From Haliotis rubra (taxonomy: Eukaryota), in the NCBI RefSeq assembly GCF_003918875.1, contig NW_025766181.1:434001-498000 (forward strand): a stretch of DNA of 64,000 bases. Direction: 5' to 3'. Positions 28,562 through 57,384 of this stretch are shown here, piece after piece; the stretch's first letter is position 1; each line of letters opens with the position of its first letter. Position numbers and translations under genes: made by a program. The notes under the pieces were generated by a model. That model did no database searches, was not told the DNA's origin, and was given only the letters and a program-made list of their open reading frames with translations.

Positions 28562-30012
28562 TCATCTCGATGAAAGTGAGGTCGATGGGAAATATTCCGC
28601 ATAACCAGATGAATGTTCGGAATGTGACAGAAATTGCTGGCCGTCGTGTGGAGACATCTGTCTGTCTTTTGAAACACCGAAATTGAATTCCATGTGGTCT
28701 GTATTAACCATATTTTGTGACGTTTCCGGTCCGTCCCCAGAATCACCTTGGTCACTGTCCACGTAACGAGGAACCGGTTCATAGAATTCAGGTGCCTCCG
28801 TGATCTTTTGATGTGCATCTGTGGAGTCTGTTTGCCCGCTCAAACTGTCACTGTCCAAGCCTCTATTAAAACCAGGAGCACCTGTATTGCTTCCCGCAGA
28901 TGTTGCCACTGCTGCCACCCCTTCACCTGCTCTATTGCTTGACTGGACTTCAGAAAAAGCTGAATGCAGACCGTTGAGGGTTGTGAATGATGGTATTTCA
29001 TTAGCAACTGACGTCAACAAGGAAGTCGATTTAGGGTCAACTTCGGTGCTTGTTAGAGGCCTACCCAAAAGCGTGTCTCCTACATGCGTGTCCGTAAGTT
29101 GCTGGGAAGTGTATGCATCAGTTGGACTAGAGATAGGTGGCAGTGAATTGGTTGTTCCACTTGACGGTTGATTCTGATTCCACTGAGCTCCACCAACGCC
29201 GTGTTGGGAGTTGAAAGACGTGGTAGTTGTTCCTGCTGAGCTACTCTGATGAGATGTTCCAGAAGGAGATCCACCTGTATTGACAGTCATCTGTATCCCT
29301 GATGTTTTGGTAGCGTCGCCATGACCTGTTTGTGTCCCCGCTTGGTGGTCACTCGTCCCTTGCGGCAACATCTGTATCCCAGGAAGTGTCATAGTTTGCC
29401 TTTGGTGAGAATGCCCTTGAAGGGACAGTTGTGACTTAGTATGGCCAGTACCGCTCATACTTATAAAACCAGCCTCACCAGGAGACAAATGCGAGGCAGT
29501 GATCTGTACTAAATTTACGAGTGGATCTGCAATACTTTCCGAAATCACTGCTTTTGTTGAGCGTCCTGTACGTAGCGTTCCCTCTTGGTTCTTCAAAGAA
29601 TGTTGTTGTTTGTTTTGGCCCTGTACTCCCATTGCAACATCAAACAGCACGTTGTTTGAGCTATGAAGAGGTTCTGTAGCCATATTCGGCATTATAATAT
29701 CATTGACAGAACCCACAGAGGCCCTGTATGCTTGTGCGTTTTCTTGACTTGACAGCTTAGATTCTGCTGTAGGTGGGTTCTGCATGTCGATGTTAACTGC
29801 AGATAACGATTGTCCGTATGGCACAGATCCAGATGATGCTACAGTGTCAGGAGGAAGCTGATTGGACTGGGATTGGGTCACGGTTTTCATGACATTAACC
29901 GTTGTGGTTGCAGTGCCTGAGGTTGAACCTTGGGATGAGGCACTACTAGAGGGAGATGTATATGGAACAGGACTGTCCAAAGCTTGCGACATCTCATTCT
30001 GCAAATATGTAT
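28562..30012 (-). CDS. Giant secreted repetitive protein, last coding exon (~482 aa, S/T/Q/G-rich, no Cys, no TM segment)
   Basis: Acceptor ttaatttatttcag, phase 1, in frame with ORF 28562..30004; TGA at 28564-28562. Confidence 0.8.
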
Positions 30013-30238
30013 CTGAAATAAATTAAAATAATCATATTACGGCTAACGTTTAATATGATCTCTGCATATATATCGTAATGCTTCTTTAAAATGAGACAGT
30101 CATTTCTAGCCTTTTTCCATTAGGTTGAATGGTGATGAAAGGCAATGACCTTGGGGTGTCAGCATGATGTTGGGTAAAAGTGTAAAGATATTTAGACTGA
30201 AGATGGTTAAACTCTCAGTGACCTACGTGTATATCACA

Positions 30239-31472: not shown

Positions 31473-31740
31473 CAAAAATCAATAAAGTATTGATTGTGTA
31501 GGACCATGAAGCAGCAGTAAGATATCGATCCTTCGTGATTAGTTAATCAAATACACGCATCCTTTGCAAATGTATACGCAATTCACTTCCAAAAAACATT
31601 GCCTGCATTCCTATTATAAAGATAATGATCTTATGAAAACATTGTACGCGATCTAAGGTGATACTAACCTAAGTTGTTAAAACCTTGTGTAGATAAGAAC
31701 TGCATCACATCATTTGAAATGGGTCCATATTCCGTCGTAC

Positions 31741-31755
31741 CTGAGTAACCTCCGC
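31741..31755 (-). CDS. Candidate 15-nt micro-exon of the giant gene (GGGYS)
   Basis: atgcatttcag|GCGGAGGTTACTCAG|gtacga; symmetric phase 1-1. Confidence 0.4.
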
Positions 31756-31920
31756 CTGAAATGCATTTATGAATATTACAATTATACCGAGTGGCCAATG
31801 GTCAAATGAGGGACAATATGATGATGAAATGTCAACCTAGATCGGTCTCACTGAATACACGTTGGCATATTCAGACAGTCATTAGTCATGCTTTACTAAA
31901 TATGTTTTTCATTAAGCACA

Positions 31921-32085: not shown

Positions 32086-32612
32086 GATGTTACTCTGGGT
32101 ACATAGGGGGTTAAAACAAGAAACACCCACTGTATATATGTGTGCATTTAGACCAGTAAAAAGAGCACCAGCTGTATGTATATTGCATTAACAAGGATCT
32201 TATGTCACCAAACGTAGGAGCATGTGTATCTGCACAGGTTGTGACCATACTGAACGACACAACATCCAATTCGTCATTTCTCGACTTGTGAGAATAACTA
32301 CACAGCTTGAATAGTACTCCATTCGTGGCCACACTGGTACCACTGTGTAAAACCCAACCATAGGGTTTATATTTTGAATGTGTTTTTCAAATCAAAATGT
32401 TCACTAAAGCCTGGTATACTGTCCTATGAAACTAGTCCACTTGGCGAGATCATGTCAGGGCTAATCCGACACAAAACGATTCGCAGTGCTTTATACTTCC
32501 AGATAAACATGTATAATTGTTCCAAGGAGCCGTCTTGGGTATTGTCAACACAACTATTTGTATTTTCAGTTTGGTTACTGTGTATCTAATTCCGATTGCA
32601 GGTTGCCAATAC

Positions 32613-32645
32613 CTTGTCCGTTCACAGCCGTATAGTCGAACAGAC
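32613..32645 (-). CDS. Candidate 33-nt micro-exon of the giant gene (GLFDYTAVNGQ)
   Basis: ctttgttcctatttccag acceptor, AAG|GTATTG donor, symmetric phase 1-1, open frame. Confidence 0.6.
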
Positions 32646-32996
32646 CTGGAAATAGGAACAAAGAATGCTAAGTTACACTCAAGCATCAGAACGTATATGT
32701 AAATAGTCTGAGGGTGACATGTGTTACACGTTCAGTGAAACATATGCGTGATATATAACATGGGCTCTCTATGACTTTTTAATAACATCAAATCTCCCAC
32801 GTCGTCCTTGCGGTCGGCATGTTTAATATCTTGCCTTCACAAATATTTCAATATTTCACTGGGAAAACATCGTAATAATTCTAAACGTTTGAAAGAGACA
32901 AGGAATCTTTTGATGGTATTTGTCGCACTGAAAACAAAATATATGTTTACATACCTTAAGGATGATGCCAGCACCATACTTTATGAAGGTACAAAC

Positions 32997-35900
32997 CTGG
33001 TAAGGTTGGGGTGTGACCCCCTCTACTAGGAGTGGGAGGGATAATCGAGGGATGGGAAGGAGGAGATGCAGGGGAAGAGGCATCAGTGCTTGTAGAAAAT
33101 TGTCGGTCTGTTCCTGTGTGTGCTCCGCCTTGTTTGCTCTTTTCACCACCCCCATTTAACCTCCAATTTTGTTTTTGACTTCCCCCCATACCCTTCATGA
33201 TCCCAGACAACGGTTGCATTTCATGCAATGTCTTATGACCTGTGAATCCTTGATGTTTTGAACTTGAAATACCATTTTCTGAATGTGCTCCCATCTCAGT
33301 ACTAACTGCTGCGCGATGCAGTTCAGGTGTGCCTACCTCAGCATTGTGACCAGCTCTATTGTTAGATGATACTCTATTGGCAGGGATTCTTCTCTGGTTC
33401 CCAAATTCGTTTGCATATGTCTTGAAAGGGTCTGTAGGACTCAACCCAGACGCACGTGTCCTCCTATTATTTGAAAAAATAGCTTTCACCTCAACCTCAC
33501 TCTCATTCAGTTCTTTAGATGTCTCGCTAGGTTCTTGTGGTACAGGGTTTACAGAATTGTAACCGGAATCTCGTGTGCTGAAAATGTACATGTGAGGAGC
33601 ACGTTGTGTATCAGAACTTCCATCAGACTCTGTACGTAAAGCAATTGTGTCAAGAGACATTTGTCCGATTGGAGTAGGCGCTACTTTCCTTGCTAAATAC
33701 GCTTTAAGCAGCGAATGACTTATATGCATATCAATACAAGTTTCCGTTTTGTTGCATTTTGAATCCGAACTGGTACCAAACCCGTTGTTTTCCTGTTGGA
33801 AGCTGCTTTGGCTTTTTGTCTGTGGTTTGGACTGTTTTTCACCATGGAGGACAGATGCTTCACCACGAGAAGCTCCAGTAGTGGATATTTCTATTTCAAC
33901 CTTGGGTGCTCCATACCTTTGTACGTAGTGCTGTATTTTGTTGTCTTGCACTATGGCATCTCCATTCGTACTCAAGGGCTTGTTCACTGTATTCACATGA
34001 TGTCTATGGGACTTGGACTCTTGACTGGAAGCTTCTTTATTGGGTGAGTGTTGGAGGATATTGATGGAATCAGCTACGGTGTGAGGGACAACGGGGTGGT
34101 TAATGTTATTCTCTGATAATGGAACTGACTGTCCCTCTACAGGTTTGGGAGTGTACTTGTAGGATTCTGTGGGAGTGAAAGCATATCCTTTCTGAGATGA
34201 TTGTTCTTGTAACATGTGCGCTGAGTGGTGTCTTGTATGAAATAATGTTTCCAGTTTAGAATGTATTTTATCTGTGCCTGTTGGTGTTTCCTTATTAGTC
34301 ATATTTGTTTTCAAGGTTGCATTTATTTTCTGTTTATCGATACAGTTTGGAGTGTGACATTTAGATAAAGATGGAGAAATCTTGCTGAATATCTGTGTAG
34401 ATACTTTATTCTTTCCCTGATTGATTCTACTGCTATTGCTAGTTGACTGTGAATATATATTGGTTATACTCTCTGCTGGAGTAACGGTACGTCCATATGA
34501 AGAAAGTACACTTTTTGAAACGGTTTCAGAATTGCTATTTGTAGGTAATGGCTGTCCGTCTAAGTGTAGAGCGGCGCTGGGCGATGTATTATGTGTCGAA
34601 AGGGAATTTCGTGTTGTGGCACTGATCATTTTAGCTGTGCATGTTTTCGTGGTGCAGTTTGCTGAAGTAACTGACTGTGTTGGAACACTGACATTGCGTT
34701 CAGCATCAAGCTGATATACTGCAGTATTTGGTTTGTTAAGGGTCTGTGTATGATGTGATTGTTTTCCGCTTTGCACCTTTCTGTGATTGTGAATGTCTTG
34801 CATTGTTGTATTAGCATCTTTACCTTCAGAAACAGTGTTTGACTGATCCAACCCTGACGTTTGTTGAACAGTGTTACTTGCTGACGCAACTGTTTGGATG
34901 AAAACAGTGTTAACATGGGGATGTGTTTCACCATAGGATGTAGCTGTTCCCGTCGATTTTAGCTTCCCTGTGGCCTTCGGTGAAGCATTGCTGTCTAAAT
35001 ATGCCTGAACCTTGGCATCACTTATATGCTTATCTATGCAGGTTACTGGAGAGCATTTAGTGTTAGGAAGTTGACCTGATCGTGTTAGATGTTTCTCAAG
35101 AGTTACACCGCCTAATGCACCACCATCACCATCTAAAGACTTGACGTTCAAGGGAACAGGAGTAGCACTGGGCCCATTTTGACCTGCTATAGTGCTGTAA
35201 AAAGATGAAGCAAAACCTGGCAGAATACGATTTGGGGTATTGCTTGTACCCTCGAGATGGCTCAAAGGCTCTTTCACAGAGGTTGTTGTCTTGTCTTGCT
35301 TTCCAATTGCAGAATGTTGTGCAGATAGACTGTGAGCATCAGTAGATTCAAATGTTAGTCTTTCAGGGATGATTGGGTTGTCTCTAGTTTGTGCGTTAAC
35401 AATTTCGGGTAAGGAGGGACTGGCTGTTTCAGTGTGTGGGGTTGGATTTCCTGGCTTATTAGAGACACGTTGAATGTTTGTTGCCGTGTATGTATGATGT
35501 GCTAGAAAACTGGACGACTTTGTGGTCGAATGCGAATTGGCAGATACAGTGTTTTGTGACTCGAATGTTGTCTGAGAGCCACTGTTTCTATGTGTACCGG
35601 TAGTTCCTGTGTTTGTGGATGCGTATGTAGAGTCAGCTGGGATATTTGCAAAACTTATGTGTGAATGTGTTCTCGTATTTCCAGTGTTTCCCAGTGCATG
35701 CCTGTGTTGGATGGTATACCAGTAGTTCCAGTGTTTCCCAGTGCACGTGTGGAATGTTCTAGGATAGTAGACGAGCCTGAGTTGGATGGTATACCAGTAG
35801 TTCCAGTGTTTCCCAGTGCATGTGTGGAATGTTCTAGGATAGTAGACGAGCCTGAGTTGGATGGTATACCAGTAGTTCCAGTGTTTCCATGTGTGGAATG

Positions 35901-38900
35901 TTCAGTGCACGTTGTGGAATGTTCCAGTGTTTCCCAGTGCACGTGTGGAATGTTCTAGGATAGTAGACGAGCCTGAGTTTGATGGTATACCAACAGTTCC
36001 AGTGTTTCTCAGTGCATGTGTGGAATGTTCTAGGGTAGTAGACGAGCCTGATTTGGAAGGGATACCAGCAGTTCCATTGTTTGCCCGTGCATGTGTGGAA
36101 TGTTCTAGGGTAGTAGACGAGCCTGATTTGGAAGGGATACCAGCAGTTCCAGTGTTTCCCAGTGCAAGTGTGGAATGTTCTAGAGTAGTAGACGAGCCTG
36201 AGTTGGAAGGGATACCAGCAGTTCCATTGTTTGCCCGTCCATGTGTGGAATGTTCTAGGGTAGTAGACGAGCCTGAGTTGGAAGGTATACCAGCAGTTCC
36301 AGTGTTTCGTGGCACTGATAGAGAATTAGTTGGGATATTCGAGGAGCGTGTGCTACTAGTTGCAGTGTTTGTGGATGGATGTGGAGAATTTGTTGGAACG
36401 TTACTGCCTGTGTTTAAATCTTTATATCCATTGTTTGTTAAGGGGTGTATAGGATGTGAAGGAATATTAGGTCCGGTAATTGATGAAACCGTAGTTCCAG
36501 CGTTTGTAGACGGATCTGCAGGATTTGTTGTAATGTTTGTAGGCCCTGTGTTTAAATGTTTGCTAGCAGTTTCTTCGGTTTTCAGTGGATCGGTAGAGTG
36601 GGTTAGTATATTAGTAGACACTGTGCCGAAATGTCCACCCGCAGTGTTATTGTCTATTGGTGGGAATGTAGGATGTTTAGGAGCATTAGAAGAACCAGTG
36701 TTTGAATATGTGCTAGCTGTTACAACCTTTATAGACGGATCCCCTGTATATGTTTTTGATTGTTCAATACCATTTTCAGTGTTTGGTGGTGGGTTTGTAG
36801 AATGAGATTGAATGTAAGAAACAGTATTTGAATGTATACCAGAAGTTCCAATGTGTCTTGAAGGGAATGTAAGATGTGTTGGAACATTCGAAGAACCAGT
36901 GTTTGAATATGTGCTAGCTGTTACAACCTTTATAGACGGATCCCCTGTATGTGTTTTTGATTGTTCAATACCATTTTCAGTGTTTGGTGGTGGGTTTGTA
37001 GAATGAGATTGAATGTAAGAAACAGTATTTGAATGTATACCAGAAGTTCCAATGTGTCTTGAAGGGAATGTAAGATGTGTTGGAACATTCGAAGAACCAG
37101 TGTTTGAATATGTGCTAGCTGTTACAACCTTTATAGACGGATCCCCTGTATGTGTTTTTGATTGTTCAATACCATTTTCAGTGTTTGGTGGTGGGTTTGT
37201 AGAATGAGATTGAATGTAAGAAACAGTATTTGAATGTATACCAGAAGTTCCAATGTGTCTTGAAGGGAATGTAAGATGTGTTGGAACATTCGAAGATCTC
37301 TTGTTTGAATTTGCAACTTTGCTGTTTGTTGGCGGGTTTGTTGAGCTTATAAGAATGTTCGAAGATACTGTATTAGAATGTGCACTGGCACTTTCAGTAT
37401 ATGTATCAAAAGTATGTGTTGGAAAATCAAACAAAATAGTGTTCGATCGTGTGGTAGCCGTTCTAGCGTTTGTGGGCGGATTTGTAGAATGTGTTTGAGA
37501 ACTGGAAAATACTGTGTTTGAATGTATACTGGCAGTTGCAATATTCCCGGATGTGTCTGACGGATATGTTGGAATGTTAGAAGAACCTGTGTTGGTTGAC
37601 TGATATAAAGTATGTGTTGAAACACTGGAAGAGCGACCGCTTGAATGCGTGCTAGTGTCTGTTGTCCCGAGCGTTTCAATTACTTGACTATTTGTCGAAC
37701 TTTGGCTGGAATGTATACTAGAAGTGGAAGAATCCATGTTTGAAAGTGTACTATCAGTTCCAGTGTTTATGGACGGGTCTGTAAGTGCTACAGTTTTTGT
37801 CGAAACAAAGTTCGAATGAGGGTTATCTGGACCACTGTTTGTTGGTGGATATGTTGGAAAATTAGGAGCATCTTTGTTGAAATGTTCTCTATCAACCTGA
37901 GGATTAGTTGGGTGACTAGGATTGTGCGGACTGTTAGCAGAACTTTCAATTGAATGTACACTAGCACTACCAGTGTTTGTAGTCCGGTGTGTAGTGTGAA
38001 TATTAGGAGGACCAGATTTACTTGATAACGAATTGATTGTATGCAAGGATTTTGTGTCGCTGTTCACTGAACTCATTGATGAAGAGACCTCATTTACATT
38101 TAAAGTGGATATTTCATTCGTAATAAAGTCGGTTTTGTTGTTTGTAGGTAAGGATGGTACTGCGTCTAGTTGCATATTCCCTATTGTCTTAGGCGAAGCA
38201 TTGCTTGTCAGATATGCATATAGTTTTCCTTGATTAATTGTTTTGTCGATGCAGATTTCTGTCACACATTTCGAAGCTTTAAGTGTTTGATTAGAATTTT
38301 GTTTTGTTTGATTGGAATGGTGTTCCTGCAGGACATTGTTTGAGGTATTACCGCTTGTGTCTTCCGGTGATTGAGAATAATTGGTGTCCTGGATAAGTCC
38401 AGATTGTGTCTGATTATGGAATATTTTGTGGCTGGAACTGTCTGATGCAACTGATAGCCCATGTGTTCGGTTTTGTGGTTCACTTTTTGTCAAGTTTGCC
38501 TTGAATTTGTCTCCAGTGATATGGTTGTCTGTTGTGGGATTTGTAGTATCAGGTCCGGATTTTGGTGGAGCGGAAGTATGTTGTGCAAATATTTGTAAAG
38601 TAACTGTAGAAGTATGTCTACCAGACAGCTGTGTGTTCAGTGGCGTGTCAGTGTCGTGTGTCCAAGATTGAGAAGAATCCTGGTGGGTGCTTGCTGGTTG
38701 ACTATTCATTGGTTTGAATACTGGCGTTGTTGGAATATGTTCAGAGGAAAGATCATAAGTGCTTGTTTCTAATGGCTCATATGCTGGATTTGTTGGCATG
38801 ATGGAAGAAACAGTGTTTGGATCTGAAATGGCAGTTTCAGTGTTTGTTGGTGCAAATGTAGGATGTGGGGACATATTATAAGAAGTTGCTTTGGAATGTG

Positions 38901-41900
38901 TGCCATCAATCCCAGTGTTTTTTGTTGCCTCTGTAGAATGTGTTGGAATATCAGATACGCCGAAATGTGTATGCATACCTGCAGTTGCAGAGTTTATTGT
39001 TGCAAATATGGGATGTGATGGGATATTAGACGAACCTGATTTTGAATTTGTACTTGCAGTTTCAATATTTGTTGCGTATGTGAGGTGTGATGAAGTTGGA
39101 GAAGAATCAGTGCTCGAATGTGTTCGATTAAAATCAGTGTTTGTTGGCGGGTGAGTGGGATGATTTGGAATATTAGCAGACCCTGGATTTGAATGTGCAC
39201 TAGTAATACCAGTGTTTGCAGTCAGATGTGCAGTGTGAATATTAGGAGGACCAGATGTACTTGATGCCTCCATTGGTTGCAAGGGATTTGTTTCGTATTG
39301 CACTGGACGCAGTGATGAAGTGGATTCGCTTACATTTGAAGTGGATATTTCTTTCGTAATAGAGTCGGTTTTGTTGTTTGTAGATATGGATGGTACTGCA
39401 TCTAGTTGCATATTCCCTACTGCCTTAGGCGAAGCATTGCTTGTCAGATATGCATATAGTTTTCCTTGATTAATTGTTTTGTCGATGCAGATTTCTGTCA
39501 CACATTTCGAAGCTTTAAGTGTTTGATTAGAATTTTGTTTTGTTTGATTGGAATGGTGTTCCTGCAGGACGTGGTTGGAGGTATTACCGGTTGTGTCTTC
39601 CGGTGACTGAGAATAATTAGTGTCCTGGATAAGTCCAGACTGTGGTTGTTGGTGGAATGTATTGTGGATGGAACTGTCTGGTGCTAGTGGTATTCCATGT
39701 CTTGGGTTTAGTGATTCGTTGTTTGTCAAATTTGAATGTGTTGGGATACCAGAAGCCCCGGAATTTGTATGTATACCTGCAGTTGCAGGGTTTGTGGCTG
39801 CGTATGTGGGATGTGATGAGATATCTAACGAACTTGTTTTGGAATTTGTACTAACTGTTCCAATATCTGTTGTAACAACAGAAGACCATGTATTTGAATT
39901 TGTGCTTTCAGGTGCAGGATTTGTTGGCCCGCTTGGAGGTTGAGTTGGCAGAATATAAAACCCTGATGTTGAAAGTATGCCATTATTGCCAATATTAGTC
40001 GGGGGGTATGTAGGATGTATTGGAAGATTAGAAGCCTCTGAGTTTAAATGTGTACTACCTCGTAAAGGGTCTGCTGTTGTGTATGTTGGATGAGTCAGAA
40101 GAACAGACGAACCTGTGTTTGAATAAATACTATCAGTTGCAGGATGTGTTAGAGGAATAGACGAATGTGTACTAGCTGTTCCAGTGTTGGTTGGTGTGTG
40201 CATTGGATGAGACAGAAAAAAAGAAGAATCTGTGTTTGGATAAATACTATTCGTTGCCTGATTTGTTGGCGGGTATGTTGGATGAATAGGAGACCCTGTG
40301 TTTGAACGTGTACTACCTTTGTCAACGCTCGTTGGCGAGTACTTAGGTTGTGTTTGAATATTAGAAAACACTGTGCTTGATTGTTTACTAGCAGTGGTTG
40401 TGATTGCTGGTGCGTATGTAGAAAGTGATGGAATATCGGACGAACCTGTTTTTGAATTTTCACTATTTCCAGGAAATGTAAGAATCGAAGACCTTGTGTT
40501 TGAATAAATAGTATCAGTTCCAATGTTTGCTGCCGTGTTTGTGGGATGTATTGGATCAATAGGAGAACCCAATCTGGAATGCGTACTAACGCTTTCAGTC
40601 TGTGTTGTCAGGTATGGATAATGTGCTGGATTATCAGAGGGACTCGTGTTGGAATGAGTTCTTTCAGATTGTGTTGTTAGGTTTATATGAGGCACTGGAG
40701 TATTGAATAAGCGAGTGTTCGATTGTGTACTGACACTCTGTGTTGAAATATCAGAAGAATGTGCATTGTCAGTTCCAGTGTTCGTTGGCACGTGTGGAGC
40801 ATGTGCCAGATCATTATTAGAACCGGTGTTTAATTGTTTTGGCGTTTGAATATTACGTCCAGTGTTTAAAAGTGGATATGTTTCAGACGAATCAGTGTTA
40901 GATGTTAATATATCTATCAGATGCATATTTTTAGTGTTGTGTGTAACGGATTTCAATGATGATGTGAGGGAAGTGGCTACATCGTTCGTAATAGCGGCGG
41001 TACTGGATTTTGTTCCTATGGATGTTAGTGCATCTACTTGCCTATTCCCTATAGCCTTAGGTGAAGCATTGCTTGTCATATATGTCCTGAGTTTAGTTTC
41101 ACTTATATTCTTTTCTATGCAGGTTTGTGTCACACATTTCAGTGTTTGATGTGAAGTACTACCTTTTGTGTCTGATGATGCTGGAGGTGTATTTGTGTTC
41201 TGGGCACGTCCAGAGTGTGTTTGAGTATAGGGTTCTAAATTATCAGGTGATGCTGATATGCCATGAGTTCTCGGGGTAATGTCCAACCAAGGATGCCCAG
41301 GTGCAGCTCTGTCTACAGATGCAGGGGTTATACCAGTGGGTATTTCTTTGAGTGTATCCTGGCTACGAGATGATTTACGACTTTGATTGGCGCCAACACC
41401 ATGTACTACACTGTGTGAGGAAGAGGACTGACGTATGCCATCTCCTTGGGCTAATGGGATCACAAAAGGAAGTACCTGGAGGTCAGTCTGAAGTGCCTCT
41501 CGGGATGAACTAATGCTGTTACCAGCTGCTTTGTACGAAACGGCATTAATGTTGGTATTTGTACTTGACGATGGTGGCGCTTCTAATTGTAAACTCCCTA
41601 TAGCCTTTGGGGAAGGATTTTTTGTCAAATATTCTTTGATCTTCTTTGAACTGATGTGCTTGTCTATGCAGATTACAGTAGCGCACTTGGGAGTTGGGAT
41701 TGTTCCAGTTGGGATTTCTTTTGCTGATTTGGAATTGTTTTCCAAACTGAATTTGCTCGATTTTCTAGCCGCAGGGCCTAAATGCACTTGAATGTTATTT
41801 ATACTTTGGGATAAAAAGTTGGATGAAGTGTCAACTCCTTCTCTGATGACAGTGCTACCCTCAGAAACAGACTGCTTATTATCAAAACTAGAATGAATTT

Positions 41901-44900
41901 CCCCTGAGTTCTGAGTGTCCTCTGACTGACTGACGGCAGGCCACTGTGAAGGACACTACCCCTTGTTACAGCATCTTGTGACGAGTAAAATGCACTGCTT
42001 TTGGTGAACTGAGGAACATCATGTGGTGTTGGTTCAAGAGTATTATGGTATACAGGTAAATGGATATCGATTGTATTTGCTTGTGACACTGATTGACTTT
42101 GTAACGTTGCTGCTAAGGCTTTAGTGTTGCTATTTAAAGCTGATTGTTTTGAATTAGACTGTATTTTAGGTAGTGATACTGGGGATGTTGTGGCAGTGTG
42201 CGTGGCGGTGTCGTTTTGTAAGTTTTGAATTTCGGAATTGATAGTGTTTGAAATGTTGGAAGTGAACGTATTGATAAAGGATTTGTTGTTCGATACTGCT
42301 TGAGGAAAGGTGGAATTTGTGTTGCGTCCTATAGTGTGTGTGGTGGACAGGGACGATGTAGGGAGTACATGCGTAATTTTGGGTGATTTACCTTGAGGAA
42401 AGCTGATAAACTCTTGATGTCCAGTTGCAAAGGCAGGAACGGTAGTCTCTGAGATAACACTTGGAAGACTTGAGTCATACATTTGATTTGACTTCTGCTG
42501 TTGTCCTGCTCCAAACTCTATGGGTTGAAACACATTGAAACTGTTCAGGGGTGTTCGTGTCCTGCTTTGAATGGAGGGTGTCTTCTGAAATGACAAGGAC
42601 GTATCTGATCTGACGGCCATCCTGGCTCGCTCTGTTGCAGATGCATTTTGGTCTTCGGTGATTCTATTACTTATCCCCTTGGGAAAAGTGTCCTTTGTTT
42701 TCGATCCTGGAACTGCGGCTATTCTTATATCGATTGGATCGTTTCCAACAGATGTATCGGCTTTCTGTGCACTAGAAATAGAGCTTGGTTTGTGATTAGT
42801 ACCAGTTTCAGTTTTAGTGACGGGGTTGATCTCAAAAGTAGTTTGGACTGAGGCTCCACGGGCCCGGGTAGAGGAGGGTAATACTGGATACGCATCTACT
42901 TCATTCAATACAGGAAGGCGGGGATTTGGGCGGTTAGAAGGAGTGGATACAGTGTTTGCATTTGTTTTGTTAATATAAAATCCACTACGGGTATTTTCTA
43001 TGATTGTCATTTTGGAACTTTGCTTAGTAGCATTAAAAGTGTTAGTATTTTCCAGGACATGGTTTCTCTGCGGTACTTGGGTGGGGTTAACGTTACCTTG
43101 GCCGGCCAAAGGATCATAATGTGTGTTTGTTGATTGTGAATCCTGGCTTCTACTGTGCAATAACAAACTCAGAAATTCCTTCTCGAGACTTGTGCCCTCA
43201 CTACCCCTTTGTAGTATGTTACGCGTTCCATCAGAGCCTTGTTCCGTGACCGCTTCTTTTTCCAAATGATTATTGCTGGCAAGTCCGGAGTCCTGTGCAA
43301 GGAACACAGGCGGTATTGTGTAGGTTGACTCGCCTATTGCCACTGTTGCAATATTTGGTCTCGTCGACTCAATATCTGCGTGCTGACTACTTGTAACTGA
43401 TAGTCCTTGACCTCCCAACAAATCAAGGTTACCATACAGGTTACCATTTGATGACATATCTTGTATTATAGATTGTCCAGCTGGTGATACCAGTCCTTGG
43501 TTTGACACAATGTCCGAAGCGCCCTGCTGGGTGCGAATTTCTTGTACGCCTAGATGCCCATTAAAGCTATCGTGTCCTTGTCCTGTTAAACCAGACAGCA
43601 CAGTGTTATGAAAAGAGTCTCGTGTTTCACCAGTTGCACCGTTCATTCCAAATCCGCCAGCGACAATTGGCATTAGGCCTTGCAAATCTACCTTTTTTGA
43701 AGATTGTCTTTCTACTGTGCCCAACTGATCAGCACCACCTGCAGCCACAGGACTGACTCCTAAATATTGATTCAGGTTAGTTTGGTCATTAATAAATTGA
43801 GGGATTCCCACTAACATGGAACTGGCTTCTGATGTATGCCCGACAGACTTTTCAGCTAATTCTTCTTTGATCTTATTTCTGCTGTTTGCAGTATCTTGTT
43901 GCACTGATCTATATGTAGATATTCCGTTGTTTGTTGTGGTCTGTGTCAGGTCATGTAAAACTTGTGTTCCAGGAGAGGTAGTCATATCCTTAGCCCGATA
44001 TTGAGTATTGGATGATGTGACTCCTTGATGTAATGTCTCCTCCCGTGTTAATTGCAGTCCATGAGATGTTGGAACGTCTACAGTTCTGTACTCTCCGCTT
44101 GCTAATGTGACTACTTGACTAGGTGTTAGTTGCTGCCCAGCAGATCCTGACAAGTCTACAGCTCCGTATTGTCCACTTGTTGTTGCCACATGATTAGAGG
44201 TAGATTTTTTTCCACCAGATTTTCGAATGTCGACAATCCTGTACTGTTCACTTGTAGTGCCAGCTTCACCAGGTGCCAATTGCTGCCCAGCAGATGTTGC
44301 CAAGTCTACAGTTCCATGCTGACCACTTGTTGATGTGGGGCCTTGAGTAGATGAAGGTTGGTGTCCAGCTGGAGCTGGAAAGTCCAGAGGTCCGTACTGG
44401 CCATTGATTGAAGCAGCTTGGTTAGATATAGAATGCTGTCCTCCAGATGCGGAAAAGTCTCGAGTTGTGTACTGTCCGCTTGTTGAGGCAGCTTCATTAG
44501 ATGCTGATAGTTGTCCACCAGATGTCAACAAGACTCCATTTGTGTACTGTCCACTTGTTGAGGCAGCTTGATTAGACATAGATTGTTGTCCACCAGATGT
44601 TGACAAGTCTACAGCTCCGTACTGTCCACTATTTGAGGCAACTTGGTTAGATGCCGATTGTTGTCCTTCAGATGTAAACCAGTCTCCATTTGTGTACTGT
44701 CCACTTGTTGAAGCAGCTTGATTAGACATAGATTGTTGTCCACCAAATGTTGACAAGTCTCCTGTTGTGTACTGTCCGCTTGTTGAGGCATCTTGATTAG
44801 ATATAGATTGTTGTCCACCAGATACGGACAAATCTCCAGTTGTGTACTGTCCGATTGTTGAGGCAACTTGATTAGACATAGATTGTTGTCCACCAGGTGT

Positions 44901-47900
44901 TGACAAGCCTCCAGTTGTGTACTGTCCGCTTGTTGAGGCAGCTTGATTAGACATAGATTGTTGTCCACCAGGTGTTGACAAGCCTCCAGTTGTGTACTGT
45001 CCACTTGTTGAGGCAGCTTGATAAGACATAGATTCCAGTCCACCAGGTGTTGACAAGCCTCCAGTTGTGTACTGTCCGCTTGTTGAAGCATCTTGATTAG
45101 ATATAGATTGTTGTCCACCAGATACGGACAAATCCCCAGATGTGTACTGTCCGCTTGTTGAGGCAGCTTGATTAGACATAGATAGTTGTCCACCAAATGT
45201 CGACAAGTCTCCTGTTGTGTACTGTCCACTTGTTGTGGCAGCTTGATTAGACATAGATGGTTGTCCACCAAATGTTGACAAGTCTCCAGTTGTGTACTGT
45301 CCAATTGTTGAGGCAGCTTGATTAGACATAGATTGTTGTCCACCAGGTGTTGACAAGCCTCCAGTTGCGTACTGTCCGCTTGTTGAGGCAACTTGATTAG
45401 ATGTAGATGGTTGTCCACCAAATGTCGACAAGTCTCCAGTTGTGTACTGTCCGCTTGTTGAGGCAGCTTGATTAGACATAGATTGTTGTCCACCAGGTGT
45501 TGACAAGCCTCCAGTTGTGTACTGTCCACTTGTTGAGGCAGCTTGATAAGACATAGATTCCAGTCCACCAGGTGTTGACAAGCCTCCAGTTGTGTACTGT
45601 CCGCTTGTTGAGGCAGCTTGATTAGATATAGATGGTTGTCCACCAAATGTTGACAAGTCTCCAGTTGTGTACTGTCCACTTGTTGAGGCAGCTTGATTAG
45701 ACATAGATTGTTGTCCACCAGGTGTTGACAAGCCTCCAGTTGTGTACTGTCCACTTGTTGAGGCAGCTTGATTAGACATAGATTGTTGTCCACCAGGTGT
45801 TGACAAGCCTCCAGTTGTGTACTGTCTGCTTGTTGAGGCAGCTTGATTAGACATAGATTGTTGTCCACCAGGTGTTGACAAGCCTCCAGTTGTGTACTGT
45901 CCACTTGTTGAGGCAGCTTGATTAGATGTAGATTGTTGTCCACCAAATGTTGAGAAGTCTCCAGTTGTGTACTGTCCGCTTGTTGAGGCAGCTTGATTAG
46001 ATATAGATTGTTGTCCACCAGATGCGGACAAGTCCCCAGATGTGTACTGTCCGCTTGTTGAGGCAGCTTGATTAGATATAGATTGTTGTCCACCAAATGT
46101 TGACAAGTCCCCAGTTGTGTACTGTCCGCTTGTTGAGGCAGCTTGATTAGATATAGATTGTTGTCCACCAGATGTTGACAAGCCTCCAGTTGTGTACTGT
46201 CCACTTGTTGAGGCAGCTTGATTAGACATAGATTGTTGTCCACCAGGTGTTGACAAGCCTCCGGTTGTGTACTGTCCACTTGTTGAGGCAGCTTGATTAG
46301 ACATATTAGATTGTTGTCCACCAGATGTCGACAAATCTCCAGTTGTGTACTGTCCACTTGTTGAAGCAACTTGATTAGACATAGGTTGTTGTCCACCAAA
46401 TATCGACAAGTCTCCAGTTGTGTACTGTCCGCTTGTTGAAGCAACTTTATTAGACATAGATTGTTGTCCACCAGATGTTGACAAGTCTCCAGTTGTGTAC
46501 TGTCCGCTTGTTGAGGCAACTTGATTAGACATAGATTGTTGTCCACCAAATGTCGACAAGTCTCCAGTTGTGTACTGTCCACTTGTTGAAGCAACTTGAT
46601 TAGATGATTGTTGTCCGATTGTTGTGTACTTCAGATGTATAACCAGTCTCCAAGTTTGTGTACTGTCCACTTGTTGAGGCAGCTTGATTAGATAGATTGT
46701 TGTCCACCAGATTGTTGACAAGCCTCCACTGTCAGATTGATTAGACGATTGACAAATCTCCAGTTGTGTACTGTCCACTTGTTGAGGCAGCTTGATTAGA
46801 TATAGATTGTTGTCCACCAGATGCGGACAAGTCCCCAGATGTGTACTGTCCGCTTGTTGAGGCAGCTTGATTAGATATAGATTGTTGTCCACCAAATGTT
46901 GACAAGTCCTCCAGTTGTGTACTGTCCGCTTGTTGAGGCAGCTTGATTAGACATAGATTGTTGTCCACCAGGTGTTGACAAGCCTCCGGTTGTGTACTGT
47001 CCGCTTGTTGAGGCAGCTTGATTAGACATAGATTGTCGTCGACCAGATACGGACAAATCTCCGGTTGTGTACTGTCCAATTGTTGAGGCAGCTTGGTTAG
47101 ACATAGATTGTTGTCCACCAAATGTTGAGAAGTCTCCAGTTGTGTACTGTCCGCTTGTTGAGGCAACTTGATTAGACATAGGTTGTTGTTGTCCACCAGA
47201 TACGGATAAATCTCCTGTTGTGTACTGTCCGCTTGTTGAGGCAGCTTGATTAGATATAGATTGTTGTCCACCAGATGCGGACAAGTCCCCAGATGTGTAC
47301 TGTCCGCTTGTTGAGGCAACTTGATTAGACATAGGTTGTTGTCCACCAAATGTCGACAAGTCTCCAGTTGTGTACTGTCCGCTTGTTGAGGCAACTTGAT
47401 TAGACATAGGTTGTTGTCCACCAAATGTCGACAAGTCTCCAGTTGTGTACTGTCCGCTTGTTGAGGCAACTTGATTAGACATAGGTTGTTGTCCACCAAA
47501 TGTCGACAAGTCTCCAGTTGTGTACTGTCCGCTTGTTGAGACAACTTGATTAGACATAGGTTGTTGTCCACCAAATGTCGACAAGTCTCCAGTTGTGTAC
47601 TGTCCGCTTGTTGAGACAACTTGATTAGACATAGGTTGTTGTCCACCAAATATCGACAAATCTCCAGTTGTGTACTGTCCACTTGTTGAGGAAACTTTAT
47701 TAGATATAGATTGTTGTCCACCAGATGTTGACAAGTCTACAGCTCCGTACTGTCCACTTGTTGAGGCAACTTGGTTAGATGCCGATTGCTGTCCTTCAGA
47801 TGTAAACCAGTCTCCATTTGTGTACTGTCCACTTGTTGAGGCAGCTTGATTAGACATAGATTGTTGTCCACCAGATACGGACAAATCTCCAGTTGTGTAC

Positions 47901-50900
47901 TGTCCGCTTGTTGAGGCAGCTTGATTAGATATAGATTGTTGTCCACCAGATGCGGACAAGTCCCCAGATGTGTACTGTCCGCTTGTTGAGGCAGCTTCAT
48001 TAGACATAGATTGTTGTCCACCAAATGTCGACAAGTCTCCAGTTGTGTACTGTCCGCTTGTTGAGGCAGCTTGATTAGATATAGATTGTTGTCCACCAGA
48101 TGTCGACAAGTCTCCAGTTGTGTACTGTCCGCTTGTTGAGGCAGCTTGATTAGACATAGATTGTTGTCCACCAGATGTTGACAAGCCTCCGGTTGTGTAC
48201 TGTCCACTTGTTGAGGCAGCTTGATTAGACATAGATTGTCGTCGACCAGATACGGACAAATCTCCGGTTGTGTACTGTCCACTTGTTGAGGCAACTTGGT
48301 TAGACATAGGTTGTTGTCCACCAAATATCGACAAATCTCCAGTTGTGTACTGTCCGCTTGTTGAGGCAACTTTATTAGATATAGATTGTTGTCCACCAGA
48401 TGTTGACAAGTCTACAGCTCCGTACTGTCCACTATTTGAGGCAACTTGGTTAGATGCCGATTGTTGTCCTTCAGATGTAAACCAGTCTCCATTTGTGTAC
48501 TGTCCACTTGTTGAGGCAGCTTGATTAGACATAGATTGTTGTCCACCAGATACGGACAAATCTCCAGATGTGTACTGTCCGCTTGTTGAGGCAGCTTGAT
48601 TAGATATAGATTGTTGTCCACCAGATGCGGACAAGTCTCCAGATGTGTACTGTCCGCTTGTTGAGGCAGCTTGATTAGACATAGATCGTTGTCCACCAAA
48701 TGTCGACAAGTCTCCAGTTGTGTACTGTCCGCTTGTTGAGGCAACTTGATTAGACATAGGTTGTTGTCCACCAAATGTCGACAAGTCTCCAGTTGTGTAC
48801 TGTCCGCTTGTTGAGGCAACTTGATTAGACATAGGTTGTTGTCCACCAAATGTCGACAAGTCTCCAGTTGTGTACTGTCCGCTTGTTGAGACAACTTGAT
48901 TAGACATAGATTGTTGTCCACCAAATGTCGACAAGTCACCAGTTGTGTACTGTCCACTTGTTGGGGCAATTTGATTAGACATAGGTTGTTGTCCACCAAA
49001 TGTCGACAAATCTCCAGTTGTGTACTGTCCGCTTGTTGAGGCAACTTTATTAGATATAGATTGTTGTCCACCAGATGTTGACAAGTCTACAGCTCCGTAC
49101 TGTCCACTATTTGAGGCAACTTGGTTAGATGCCGATTGTTGTCCTTCAGATGTAAACCAGTCTCCATTTGTGTACTGTCCACTTGTTGAGGCAGCTTGAT
49201 TAGACATAGATTGTTGTCCACCAGATACGGACAAATCTCCAGTTGTGTACTGTCCGCTTGTTGAGGCAGCTTGATTAGATATAGATTGTTGTCCACCAGA
49301 TGCGGACAAGTCCCCAGATGTGTACTGTCCGCTTGTTGAGGCAGCTTGATTAGCATTGATTAGACATAGATGTGTACTGTCCGCTTGTTGAGGCAGCTTG
49401 ATTAGATATAGATTGTTGTTCACCAGATGTTGACAAGTCTCAGATGTGTACTGTTTGAGGCAACTTGGTTAGATGCCGATTGTTGATGCCAGCTCCATTT
49501 GATTGTTGAAGCAGATTAGACATAGATTGTTGTCCACCAGGTGTTGACAAGCCCCCAGATGTGTACTGTCCGCTTGCTGAGGCAGCTTGATTAGACATAG
49601 ATTGTTGTCCACCCGATGTTGACAAGCCTCCAGCCTGTGATTGTTCTACACCAAGTCCCATGTTCTGATATCTACTAGCAGATACATCAACTTGATTCCC
49701 ACTCGCTGCCCTGTCTTGCATTGTATTCTTCACATCACTGGATGTTGCTCCCTGAACTGATGGCACATCTTTGGATGTGCCCAGTGTGTTAATGCCTTGC
49801 ATATCCTTTGAACTAGTTTTGATAATATTTTTGCCAACAACAGCTCCAACAGGCTGTGCATCCAGTCTTCCGTTGAAGTTAACATCTTGTAAGACATTTC
49901 CTTGGTAGGATGATGTGGTCTGTGCTTCAGTGTTCGCTGCTGCTACTGGCTGTGCATCTCTATTAGGTGTTGTAACTGGTTTCATGACATTGACTGAGTC
50001 AACTATGCCAGAAGTATACTGATGGTCAGTTCCTGGTCCTTGACGAGAATATATTTTTTGTGTAGGTTGATACGTTTGTTGGTCGTATACTGAGCCACTT
50101 ACTTCCTTTGGGGTAGAATCAAAGACAACGTTTTGCGTAGATTCGTAGAGATTTGGTTCGGAAGATATTAGATTAGGTTCGTTGTGGGTTTGTCCGACCT
50201 GTGAAGCCATGGAGTGAACAACTCCTTGCATATCCTTTGGCTGAGTAATGCTGTGTTGTGTTGAGCCTTGTAGAACGGCTTTGGTTCCTGAACGTCCGTA
50301 GTGTTCAGAGTTATATTGTGGTTTGGATGATATATGGTCTGGTCGTGTTGATGACGTTCCTCGTTGAGATTGAACGTTTGACTGGACCAGTAGCCCTTGT
50401 TCCGATCCGTGATTTGCCATCTGCTGCTTTTGATAACTAGTTCCACGAGGGTTATTCATTGGTAAACCAAGTGTCAGTGAGCCCGGTTCTCTTGCGTTGG
50501 CAGTGGTGCGCCTTTGCGAGCCTATATTTGTTTGTGTGTTACCTCTGATGTCTTGATATTGATAAGATGAACCAGAATTCATTACGTCTGGATGTCTAGT
50601 ACCTTGTGTTTTGTCGTATGAGCTCACAACGCCTTCGACTTGCATATTCACTGGGATTCCATCAACTAAAGCAACTCTGGGAGAGTTCACTCCAACATCA
50701 ACTGGGTTTATTATAAAACCGACTGGCATGTCCAGACTGCCTGTGACATGTCTCCTGGGAATACGAATCTGTGTGTCGAATGAAAATTTGGGTGTCGACA
50801 GAAGTGGTGTCGCTACTTGCACCTGAACTCTGTTATAATTAGCTGGCCGAGTTGAACCCGTGTTGGATGCTACACCGAAGCTCCCTCTTGGGTAATCGAA

Positions 50901-50932
50901 ACCCCCTTTGGCTGTTGTTCTCACTGGACCAA
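32997..50932 (-). CDS. Giant secreted repetitive (mucin-like or structural) protein, ~17.9-kb exon (~5,980 aa) with apparent frameshifts
   Basis: Acceptor tgttctttttcag (phase 1); overlapping or abutting ORFs 49440-51002, 46871-49423, 41799-46895, 35902-41787, 35655-35942, 32956-35277 with continuous composition; donor CAG|GTTTGT (phase 1); frame breaks near 49340-49500, 46600-46910, 41915-41957, 35890-35925 and ~35700. Confidence 0.85.
35680..36310 (-). repeat. Coding tandem repeat, 75-bp/25-aa unit (NTGTAGIPSNSGSSTTLEHSTHALG), ~8 copies
   Basis: Period 75 (35943 vs 36018). Confidence 0.9.
36689..37295 (-). repeat. Coding tandem repeat, 201-bp/67-aa unit x3, near-perfect
   Basis: GAAGAACCAGTGTTTGAATATG at 36689, 36890, 37091. 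Confidence 0.92.
37990..39705 (-). repeat. Intra-exonic duplication (~37990-38470 vs ~39225-39705, offset 1236)
   Basis: QSGLIQDTNYSQSPEDT...KASKCVTEICIDKTINQGKLYAYLTSNASPK occurs twice. Confidence 0.9.
44080..49640 (-). repeat. Coding tandem repeat, 75-bp/25-aa unit (STSGQYTTGDLSTFGGQQSMSNQAA), ~70 copies
   Basis: Read directly; degenerate towards 44080; 675-bp higher-order period. Confidence 0.97.
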
Positions 50933-51108
50933 CTGAAAAAGAACACATACCAGTAAGGCACAGGAACAGATACATATATACGTAGGGGCACGGTCGCGTC
51001 ATTAGAACAGCCCTGAGCGAGGATTGTTAATTTAGGTCCGACACGGTCGCTTTTCTGTTTGTTTTCTGCCTTAAATTAATCGTCGGTAAGTATTAAATCT
51101 GGCATCTC

Positions 51109-55913: not shown

Positions 55914-56150
55914 CTGGCAGTGCTCTGTTCCAGGTACCTGGGGACCTGTGTGGTGGCTGTGACACAGGAACAATGGGTGTGAACATGGGCGGCGGAGAAG
56001 TCCATGGTGACTGTAGCGGTAGTACTGGGAAGCTGTACATTGGTATTCCCGGTCTTGGCATGATCAGAGGAATAGGGGGAAGGGTCCCCTGAAAGGGGCC
56101 TTTATAGAGCTGTGATATTTGACGAAAGGGTGATGGAGTGAAGGAGGGAG
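55914..56150 (-). CDS. Giant secreted protein, Pro-rich 237-nt exon (SPSFTPSPFRQISQLYKGPFQGTLPPIPLIMPRPGIPMYSFPV...RALP)
   Basis: Acceptor ctttttcgtttctgtttcag, donor CAG|GTAAGG, phase 1-1, frame-consistent with both neighbouring exons. Confidence 0.82.
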
Positions 56151-57293: not shown

Positions 57294-57384
57294 ATGGGGA
57301 TGGTGAAAGCCGCATAGGAATGTACGTGCCATTTATTAAACATGTTAGACATGCTAACACGAATATATACACAAGCATATCCAT
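57294..57384 (-). CDS. Giant secreted protein, signal-peptide exon (MDMLVYIFVLACLTCLING|TYIPMRLSPSP)
   Basis: Acceptor ttttatttgcag (exon starts 57395), GCAATGG start context, hydrophobic signal, donor T|GTAAGT, phase 1. Confidence 0.82.

What the first reader, a model, noticed from the sequence alone, without database searches (positions are those of the whole stretch)
33650..41690. Eight copies of an unrecognised two-cysteine mini-domain holding every Cys of the mature protein
Seen: KCATVICIDKHISSKKIKEYLTKNPSPKAIG (~41580-41690), KCVTQTCIEKNISETKLRTYMTSNASPKAIG (~41030-41140), KCVTEICIDKTINQGKLYAYLTSNASPKAVG (~39395-39505), the same ending KTIG (~38160-38270), KCSPVTCIDKHISDAKVQAYLDSNASPKATG (~34960-35060), NCTTKTCTAKMIS (~34560-34660), KCHTPNCIDKQKIN (~34260-34365) and KCNKTETCIDMHISHSLLKAYLARKVAPTPIG (~33650-33760). 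Consensus: K-C-x4(5)-C-I-D-K-x-I-x4-L-x2-Y-L-x2-N-x-S-P-K-A-x-G. It stays conserved while the flanks diverge, and I see no other in-frame Cys after the signal peptide. Inference: a small disulfide-plus-amphipathic-helix sticker module spaced along a glycosylated tether, analogous in placement (not sequence) to mucin CysD domains.
Basis: partly seen in the sequence, partly recalled or inferred. Interest (0 to 1): 0.88.

Follow-up and report, generated by a model that had tools for sequence, protein, structure and literature searches.

The report
Two-cysteine motif in abalone giant mucin
A giant secreted, sugar-coatable (mucin-like) abalone protein carries eight copies of a conserved 31-residue motif with two cysteines. 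It matches no named domain and was seen in only one gene family, and what it does is untested.

Summary
Eight copies of K-C-x4(5)-C-I-D-K…Y-L…S-P-K-A-I-G lie in one minus-strand frame at the stated places. Off the motif, cysteines appear only in intron sequence or in stretches where the assembled tandem repeats are out of frame.

The gene is a six-exon abalone gene (57384 down to 28565) with a 17.9-kb giant exon. Its Haliotis asinina orthologue (XP_067650662.1, 5472 aa, auto-named "serine-rich adhesin for platelets-like") is intact. It has 20 Cys: 2 in the signal peptide and 18 in nine motifs.

The core is sharply bounded at 31 residues.
- **Paralogue flanks:** they keep no similarity.
- **Selection:** synonymous sites between copies are saturated while dN/dS is 0.13-0.49.
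- **Orthologue identity:** 0.78 in canonical copies against 0.60 outside (p = 3.5e-5). Two degenerate copies keep little more than the Cys pair.

No match was found in Pfam, PDB sequences or the ESM Atlas. A profile search of 1.84 billion representatives found only the orthologue.

AlphaFold2 gives one short low-confidence helix per canonical copy in an otherwise disordered chain. This reads as a constrained motif, not a proven autonomous domain. The "sticker" role is plausible but untested. An intra-motif six-residue disulfide ring is at least as likely as interchain bonds.

As assembled, the giant exon has several frame breaks. I rate interest as moderate.

The parts
57294..57384 (-). Exon 1: start codon and signal peptide (contains two Cys, C-x2-C), GT donor at 57293
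   Evidence: tblastn of the H. asinina orthologue residues 1-35; sequence read; strongest hydrophobic segment of the orthologue is residues 4-22
55914..56150 (-). Exon 2: Pro-rich N-terminal piece, no Cys
   Evidence: 87% identity to orthologue residues 31-105; AG acceptor and GTAAGG donor read directly
32997..50932 (-). Giant exon 3 (17.9 kb): about 70 x 25-aa S/T/G/Q repeats, non-repetitive Ser/Thr-rich stretches, His-rich Ser/Thr/Pro stretches with 75-bp and 201-bp repeats, and all eight motifs. As assembled it is broken by frame changes near 49443-49468, 46744-46946, 41802-41955, about 35925 and about 35700, and by an in-frame TGA at 35902-35904
   Evidence: Stop-free stretches of 2017, 1715, 981 and 865 codons; collinear BLASTP to orthologue residues 107-4977; tandem repeats; acceptor and donor read; frame changes read
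41596..41688 (-). Motif copy 1 (canonical)
   Evidence: 84% identical to orthologous copy
41047..41139 (-). Motif copy 2 (canonical)
   Evidence: 66% identical to orthologous copy; AlphaFold2 helix at motif positions 12-21
39415..39507 (-). Motif copy 3 (canonical; in a 590-bp segment duplicated with copy 4)
38179..38271 (-). Motif copy 4 (canonical; recent duplicate of copy 3, 98% nt identity in the core)
34966..35058 (-). Motif copy 5 (canonical)
   Evidence: 75% identical to orthologous copy; short helix predicted
34567..34659 (-). Motif copy 6 (degenerate: Cys pair and S-P kept, I-D-K and Y-L lost)
   Evidence: orthologue identity at the regional median
34270..34362 (-). Motif copy 7 (degenerate: K-C-x4-C-I-D-K kept, second half lost)
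   Evidence: orthologue identity below the regional median
33664..33759 (-). Motif copy 8 (canonical, with five residues between the Cys)
   Evidence: 88% identical to orthologous copy and the most conserved 31-residue window of the C-terminal 495 aa; helix predicted
32605..32649 (-). Small exon 4 (approximate bounds)
   Evidence: tblastn to orthologue residues 4974-4988
31661..31756 (-). Small exon 5 (approximate bounds)
   Evidence: tblastn to orthologue residues 4986-5017
28565..30013 (-). Last exon: Cys-free Ser/Thr/Gly-rich C-terminal region with an acidic tail, stop codon at 28562-28564
   Evidence: 71% identity to orthologue residues 5015-5472, ending at its last residue; 0 Cys

Best explanation
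The eight copies are a conserved 31-residue motif of one giant, secreted, mostly disordered Ser/Thr-rich (mucin-like) abalone protein. Numbered from the first Cys, the motif runs K(-1), C0, x4-5, C5, I6, D7, K8, x, I10, ... K14, L15, ... Y18, L19, ... N22, x, S24, P25, K, A, I28, G29.

Shown:
- The motif is real.
- It is sharply bounded.
- It is kept by purifying selection on the protein.
- It holds every Cys of the mature chain.
- It is present in the H. asinina orthologue.
- It matches no named domain.

Inferred:
- The two Cys, five residues apart, pair with each other in the secretory pathway. This would make a six-residue ring of the same ring size as oxytocin and vasopressin.
- The ring caps a short helix (about positions 6/12 to 21), which ends at N-x-S-P.
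- These small structured islands would be the only defined surfaces on the chain. They would serve as contact points for self-association or for a partner protein, spaced 100-1070 residues apart along a presumably O-glycosylated chain.
For: - **Gene and orthologue:** searches give a six-exon gene collinear with XP_067650662.1.
- **Secretion:** there is a signal peptide and no other hydrophobic segment; composition is S 15%, T 12%.
- **Cys restricted to motifs:**
- **Sharp core:** local-alignment z-score averages 11.6 in the core, against 0.5 and 0.2 in 63-residue flanks. K-1, C0, C5, I6, I10, Y18, P25 and G29 are invariant in the five independent canonical copies.
- **Protein-level selection, not DNA homogenisation:** between canonical copies pS is 0.35-1.0 and pN is 0.19-0.35. 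Where dS can be estimated, dN/dS is 0.13-0.49.
- **Orthologue identity:** 100/128 in canonical copies against 647/1074 outside, Fisher p = 3.5e-5.
- **Predicted structure:** in a 495-residue stretch the only predicted secondary structure falls inside canonical copies 5 and 8. A helix is predicted at motif positions 12-21 with the 16-sequence alignment.
- **Ring closure:** the ease of closing a C-x4-C ring is established peptide chemistry for oxytocin and vasopressin (own knowledge, not tested here).
Against: - AlphaFold2 confidence is low (57.8 and 30.1), so neither the helix nor any fold is established.
- The disulfide connectivity was not tested at all.
- Degenerate copies 6 and 7 keep the Cys pair but not the helix part. 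That fits a role for the thiols themselves better than a ring-plus-helix epitope.
- Conservation in the orthologue is only modestly above a background that has other equally conserved islands.
- Comparative data come from one other species.
- No expression, tissue or glycosylation data were obtainable.
- As assembled, the gene in this window has frame breaks and could be inactive in this individual.
Confidence: 0.5

Rival explanations
1. Covalent cross-linker. The two Cys of each motif bond with Cys of motifs on other chains, as paired hinge-type bonds or rings of bonds. The short helix brings the chains into register. This would polymerise a mucin-like protein that lacks VWD, C8, TIL and cystine-knot domains into a gel or adhesive network.
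For: - The protein has no other Cys and no Pfam domain that could polymerise it.
- The Cys pair is the only feature invariant in all 16 aligned copies, degenerate ones included.
- A basic residue precedes the first Cys in most copies, which could raise thiol reactivity (inference).
- Two closely spaced Cys beside a helix are how COMP, thrombospondin and matrilin oligomers are locked (own knowledge).
Against: - Without a pre-formed interface, a C-x4-C pair in a flexible peptide is expected to close on itself.
- The predicted helix is only 5-10 residues long and has no heptad pattern.
- No multimer model or experiment is available.
Confidence: 0.25
2. Reactive-thiol or metal site. The Cys pairs stay reduced. 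They would act in redox control or cross-linking with oxidised tyrosines of the 25-aa repeats, as Cys-rich mussel foot proteins do. Alternatively, pairs from two motifs would share a metal ion.
For: - The same protein carries one regularly placed Tyr per 25-aa repeat and His-rich stretches (earlier notes s1-344884 and s1-344982).
- The Cys pair alone persists in degenerate copies.
Against: - Free thiol pairs rarely survive the secretory pathway.
- His at motif position 9 is present in only 3 of 8 copies, and no other metal ligand is conserved.
- This reading does not explain conservation of I6, I10, Y18, P25 and G29.
Confidence: 0.07
3. Little or no present function. The motif is the slowest-decaying remnant of an old internal duplication unit. 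The Cys pairs persist because losing one Cys alone leaves a harmful unpaired thiol.
For: - Copies 6 and 7 have decayed apart from the Cys pair, and in the orthologue they are no better conserved than their surroundings.
- Copy number differs between species, 8 against 9.
- The gene is broken as assembled in this window.
Against: - Five independent canonical copies keep eight invariant positions, six of them not Cys, although synonymous sites are saturated and flanks are randomised.
- Canonical copies are better conserved than background in the orthologue, p = 3.5e-5.
Confidence: 0.1

Closest known systems
CysD domains of gel-forming mucins (MUC2, MUC5AC, MUC5B; Pfam Mucin2_WxxW)
   Same: Cys-containing islands that interrupt long Ser/Thr-rich regions of a secreted giant glycoprotein, and are thought to give extra contact points between chains.
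   Different: CysD domains have about 110 residues, ten Cys and a WxxW motif, and are a folded domain (own knowledge). This motif has 31 residues, two Cys and no Trp. Pfam gives no match. The protein also lacks the VWD, C8, TIL and cystine-knot domains that accompany CysD.
Interchain-disulfide-locked coiled-coil oligomerisation domains (COMP, thrombospondin-1, matrilins)
   Same: Two closely spaced Cys directly beside a helix in an extracellular protein.
   Different: Those helices run for several heptads and occur once per chain, at a terminus (own knowledge). Here the predicted helix is 5-10 residues, has no heptad pattern and recurs 8-9 times inside the chain. No sequence similarity was found.
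Oxytocin/vasopressin-type C-x4-C ring
   Same: Identical Cys spacing in 7 of 8 copies, which in those peptides closes into a stable six-residue disulfide ring.
   Different: Those are nine-residue amidated hormones cut from a neurophysin precursor (own knowledge). The only link is the chemistry of ring closure, with no homology.
Bacterial serine-rich repeat adhesins ('serine-rich adhesin for platelets', the automatic name of the orthologue)
   Same: Very long Ser-rich sequence.
   Different: This is an animal gene with introns and a classical signal peptide, with no LPxTG anchor or SRRP signal motif detected. The name reflects composition only.

Membership tests
Mucin CysD domain (Pfam Mucin2_WxxW) | About 100-110 residues with ten conserved Cys and a WxxW motif; match to the Pfam model | tested here: not met
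   The core is 31-32 residues with two Cys and no Trp. No Pfam match for the eight copies at E up to 10, nor for the long ORFs.
Gel-forming mucins | N-terminal VWD-C8-TIL assemblies and a C-terminal cystine knot | tested here: not met
   No Pfam family above threshold in any part of the window protein or of the orthologue's residues 1-520, 1900-2900 and 4050-5472. There are no Cys outside the motifs.
Mucin-like (PTS-type) secreted proteins, in the loose sense | Signal peptide, long Ser/Thr(/Pro)-rich tandem repeats, no membrane anchor needed | tested here: met
   Signal peptide in exon 1. Composition S 15%, T 12%, P 6%, with 75-bp, 150-bp, 201-bp and 225-bp tandem repeats. O-glycosylation itself was not tested.
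Bacterial serine-rich repeat adhesins | KxYKxGKxW-type signal peptide, two SRR regions around a binding region, LPxTG anchor | tested here: not met
   Spliced animal gene, no Pfam hit, and the C-terminus is acidic without a hydrophobic anchor.
Disulfide-locked coiled-coil oligomerisation domains (COMP/TSP/matrilin type) | Amphipathic helix of several heptads with a/d hydrophobic positions, next to the Cys pair | tested here: not met
   Predicted helices are 5-10 residues. Conserved hydrophobic positions 6, 10, 15, 18 and 19 do not follow a heptad pattern.
Any family with a solved structure | Sequence-profile match to a PDB chain | tested here: not met
   A profile of the eight copies against 177,635 PDB sequences gave a best E of 1.6. 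Fold comparison was not attempted because the model is of low confidence.

The most novel reading that the evidence does not exclude
The motif is a new minimal polymerisation or cross-link module. Eight or nine two-Cys sites along a 5,500-6,000-residue chain would form reversible interchain disulfides or helix contacts. These would turn a mucin-like protein without VWD or cystine-knot domains into the gel or adhesive network of abalone mucus. That would be an independent, lineage-specific solution to mucin network formation.
Probability: 0.2. Interest if true: 0.6.

Novelty: new variant of a known kind. Interest (0 to 1): 0.4.

Why it matters
Mucus and bio-adhesive networks are usually explained by large Cys-rich domains (VWD, cystine knot, CysD). 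A giant secreted Ser/Thr-rich protein whose only cysteines sit in 8-9 tiny conserved motifs would be a much simpler design.

If the motifs do link chains or dock partners, they offer a small, testable and possibly engineerable cross-linking unit. They would also give a handle on how abalone mucus or adhesive is built.

If they only form internal rings with no partner, this is an ordinary lineage-specific motif in a fast-evolving mucin-like gene. At present the finding rests on one gene in two abalone species, with no expression or biochemical data.

Tried and rejected
- **Pfam:** scans of the long ORFs, the eight copies and three parts of the orthologue gave only sub-threshold noise: Eapp_C, HAMP_N3, DUF6203, NAD_binding_4 and ADIP.
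- **PDB sequence profile:** best E was 1.6.
- **ESM Atlas:** feature search of copy 2 gave a best score of 0.66, which is noise.
- **Profile of the eight copies against 1.84 billion cluster representatives:** four hits. One is the orthologue. The other three are unrelated, each matching only part of the profile: a repeated plant (Festuca) protein that looks to me like a subtilase fragment, a small ENA metagenome protein repeating K-C-S-T-Q-I-C-I-D, and a Cys-rich ENA metagenome repeat protein.
- **Three word-index homology searches:** queries were 773 aa, the orthologue's residues 2000-4800, and 262 aa. They found only the orthologue itself. Proteins of about 1350-3010 aa were never candidates, so other abalone gene models may have been missed.
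- **Orthologue locus:** No codon-level orthologue comparison was therefore possible.
- **Literature:** no paper holds the motif strings or the accession. Abalone and mollusc mucin searches gave background only.
- **Earlier notes of this scan:** none mention the motif elsewhere in the genome.
- **Intron at the 35925-35700 frame breaks:** considered and rejected. The one donor/acceptor pair I tried does not restore the frame, and the orthologue reads straight through.
- **N-glycosylation sequon as the reason for conserving N22-x-S24:** considered unlikely, because Pro follows the Ser, a context known to disfavour glycosylation (own knowledge).
- **Rfam:** no RNA family in the window.
Full report
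**What is there**

The minus strand of the window between about 57400 and 28560 carries one very large gene. Stop-free stretches of 2017, 1715, 981 and 865 codons are far beyond chance in DNA of about 40% G+C. TRF finds long arrays of 75/150/225-bp units at 44394-49361. It also finds 75-bp and 201-bp units at 35700-37310.

The cores are:
- 41596-41688
- 41047-41139
- 39415-39507
- 38179-38271
- 34966-35058
- 34567-34659
- 34270-34362
- 33664-33759

**Whose gene it is**

A profile built from the eight copies was run against 1.84 billion cluster representatives. It returned one strong hit, a 5472-residue protein with nine matched stretches. This is XP_067650662.1/XP_067650663.1 of Haliotis asinina, named automatically "serine-rich adhesin for platelets-like isoform X1".

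BLASTP of the window's stop-free stretches against it is collinear over the whole length, with 63-88% identity outside the tandem repeats. Earlier notes of this scan call the genome blacklip abalone. I did not verify the species, but the orthologue makes an abalone origin safe.

**Gene model**

Using the orthologue and the splice sites read directly, the model is:

| Exon | Coordinates | Content |
|---|---|---|
| 1 | 57384-57294 | start codon, signal peptide |
| 2 | 56150-55914 | Pro-rich N-terminal piece |
| 3 (giant) | 50932-32997 | repeats and all eight motifs |
| 4 | about 32649-32605 | small exon |
| 5 | about 31756-31661 | small exon |
| 6 (last) | about 30013-28565 | Cys-free C-terminal region |

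The phases of exons 1-3 are consistent. The orthologue has no hydrophobic segment other than the signal peptide and is 15% Ser and 12% Thr. No part of either protein reaches a Pfam threshold.

It is therefore a secreted, Ser/Thr-rich, mucin-like giant. Glycosylation is an inference from composition.

**State of the gene in this window**

As assembled, the giant exon changes frame:
- near 49443-49468
- several times within 46744-46946
- near 41802-41955
- near 35925
- near 35700

It also has an in-frame TGA at 35902-35904. All but one of these lie inside tandem repeats, and the H. asinina protein reads straight through. I cannot tell assembly error from real inactivation, and I repaired nothing.

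**All cysteines are in the motif**

In the motif frame, every Cys from 41685 to 33738 belongs to a motif except those at 35820 and 35745. Those two lie where the 75-bp repeat is out of frame; in the frame that continues the repeat there is no Cys.

Cys at the head of the 51026-49443 stretch are intronic, upstream of the acceptor at 50933. Those at the heads of the next two stretches are out-of-frame repeat readings.

The intact orthologue gives the clean count: 20 Cys, 2 in the signal peptide and 18 in nine motifs. Random placement of 16 Cys never gave more than four such pairs in 200,000 trials.

**Is the motif constrained?**

Four tests bear on this.

1. *Boundaries.* Among the seven independent copies (dropping copy 4), local-alignment z-scores against shuffles average 11.6 for the core. 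They average 0.5 and 0.2 for 63-residue flanks. In the five canonical copies K-1, C0, C5, I6, I10, Y18, P25 and G29 are invariant, and identity falls to noise one residue before K-1 and within about ten residues after G29.
2. *Codons.* Between canonical copies the proportion of synonymous differences is 0.35-1.0, mostly saturated, while the nonsynonymous proportion is 0.19-0.35. Where dS can be estimated, dN/dS is 0.13-0.49. Conservation therefore acts on the protein and is not DNA homogenisation. The exception is copies 3 and 4, which sit in a 590-bp segment duplicated at 86% identity.
3. *Orthologue.* Identity is 141/192 inside motifs against 647/1074 outside (p = 2.7e-4). Canonical copies 1, 2, 5 and 8 give 100/128 (p = 3.5e-5). 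Degenerate copies 6 and 7 give 41/64, no better than background.
4. *Sliding windows.* In a 31-residue window over the C-terminal 495 residues, copies 5 and 8 rank at the 85th and 96th percentile, and copies 6 and 7 at the 50th and 36th. Other islands without Cys are about as well conserved.

The paralogue comparison carries most of the weight. Copy number differs between species (8 against 9), through duplication of the copy-3 type.

**Is it a known domain?**

No match was found in:
- Pfam, for the copies at E up to 10 and for the long pieces
- PDB sequences, best E 1.6
- the ESM Atlas, best 0.66

The three other profile hits are a repeated plant (Festuca) protein that looks to me like a subtilase fragment and two ENA metagenome proteins. 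Each matches only part of the profile and none is related.

Three word-index searches found only the orthologue. These are limited by length windows, which left proteins of about 1350-3010 aa untested. The profile search is limited by the low information of a 45-position model in so large a library, so single or diverged copies elsewhere would be missed. No paper holds the motif strings or the accession.

**Structure**

AlphaFold2 on copy 2 with a 16-sequence alignment of both species gives mean pLDDT 57.8. It predicts one helix at residues 20-29 of the query, which is motif positions 12-21.

A 495-residue stretch with copies 5-8 is predicted disordered throughout (pLDDT 30). It has only two short helices, both inside canonical copies 5 and 8 and none in the degenerate ones.

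This supports a short helix after the Cys pair but not an autonomous folded domain. The conserved I6-I10-K14-Y18 positions are spaced i+4, and L15/L19 sit beside them. This is compatible with a helix from about C5 to S21 ended by N-x-S-P, but the hydrophobic positions spread over a wide arc and show no heptad pattern (my reading).

**How it most likely works**

What is shown: a constrained two-Cys motif, recurring 100-1070 residues apart in a secreted, otherwise disordered chain.

What is inferred: two Cys five residues apart in a flexible peptide would be expected to pair with each other in the ER. That gives a six-residue ring of the same size as in oxytocin and vasopressin (own knowledge). 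The ring would cap the short helix. These islands would be the only defined surfaces of the molecule, usable for self-association or for docking a partner.

I give the three readings these confidences:
- Ring-plus-helix contact point: about 0.5.
It is favoured by the absence of any other polymerisation domain and by the survival of the bare Cys pair in degenerate copies. It is disfavoured by the lack of a substantial interface to hold chains in register.
- Redox or metal roles, or a near-functionless remnant whose Cys pairs are trapped because losing one leaves a free thiol: low but not excluded.

**Comparison with known systems**

The placement resembles the CysD domains of gel-forming mucins, but membership fails on size, Cys number, the WxxW motif and the Pfam test. 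The protein also lacks VWD and cystine-knot domains. It is not a bacterial SRRP despite the automatic name. Resemblance to disulfide-locked coiled-coil domains is limited to "two Cys beside a helix".

I file it as a new variant of a known kind: a mucin-like secreted protein with Cys-containing interruptions, built here from an undescribed minimal motif. So far it has been seen only in one orthologous gene of two abalone species.

**Verdict**

Interest is moderate (0.4): the motif is real, constrained and unnamed. But it is short, lineage-restricted and of low predicted structure, and no data on expression, disulfide connectivity or function could be obtained.

Noticed in passing
window 32997-50932 (minus strand): The giant exon is broken as assembled. 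Frame changes lie near 49443-49468, within 46744-46946, near 41802-41955, about 35925 and about 35700, and there is an in-frame TGA at 35902-35904. The H. asinina orthologue is intact through all of these. Either assembly errors in tandem repeats or a real inactivation could explain them.
   Followed up: partly
window 37910-38498 and 39149-39734: A 590-bp segment is duplicated at 86% identity and carries motif copies 4 and 3. The 93-nt motif core within it is 98% identical. H. asinina has three copies of this subtype, two of them identical over the 48 residues compared, so motif number varies between species (8 against 9).
   Followed up: partly
window 44394-49361 (minus strand): About 70 tandem 25-residue S/T/G/Q units, each with one Tyr. 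Their out-of-frame translation is Cys-containing and can mislead a frame-blind reader. The array appears longer here than in H. asinina.
   Followed up: no
window 53460-55124 (minus strand), inside intron 2: Stop-free stretches of 198-244 codons inside the 5-kb intron. They have no Pfam match and may be a decayed mobile element.
   Followed up: partly
window 13343-15837: A strongly skewed simple-sequence region (AT skew 0.68, GC skew 0.37) with four N runs at 13374-14666, which produces long spurious ORFs on both strands.
   Followed up: no
window 57294-57384: The signal peptide itself contains two Cys three residues apart (C-L-T-C), conserved in H. asinina. These are the only Cys of the precursor outside the motifs.
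   Followed up: no
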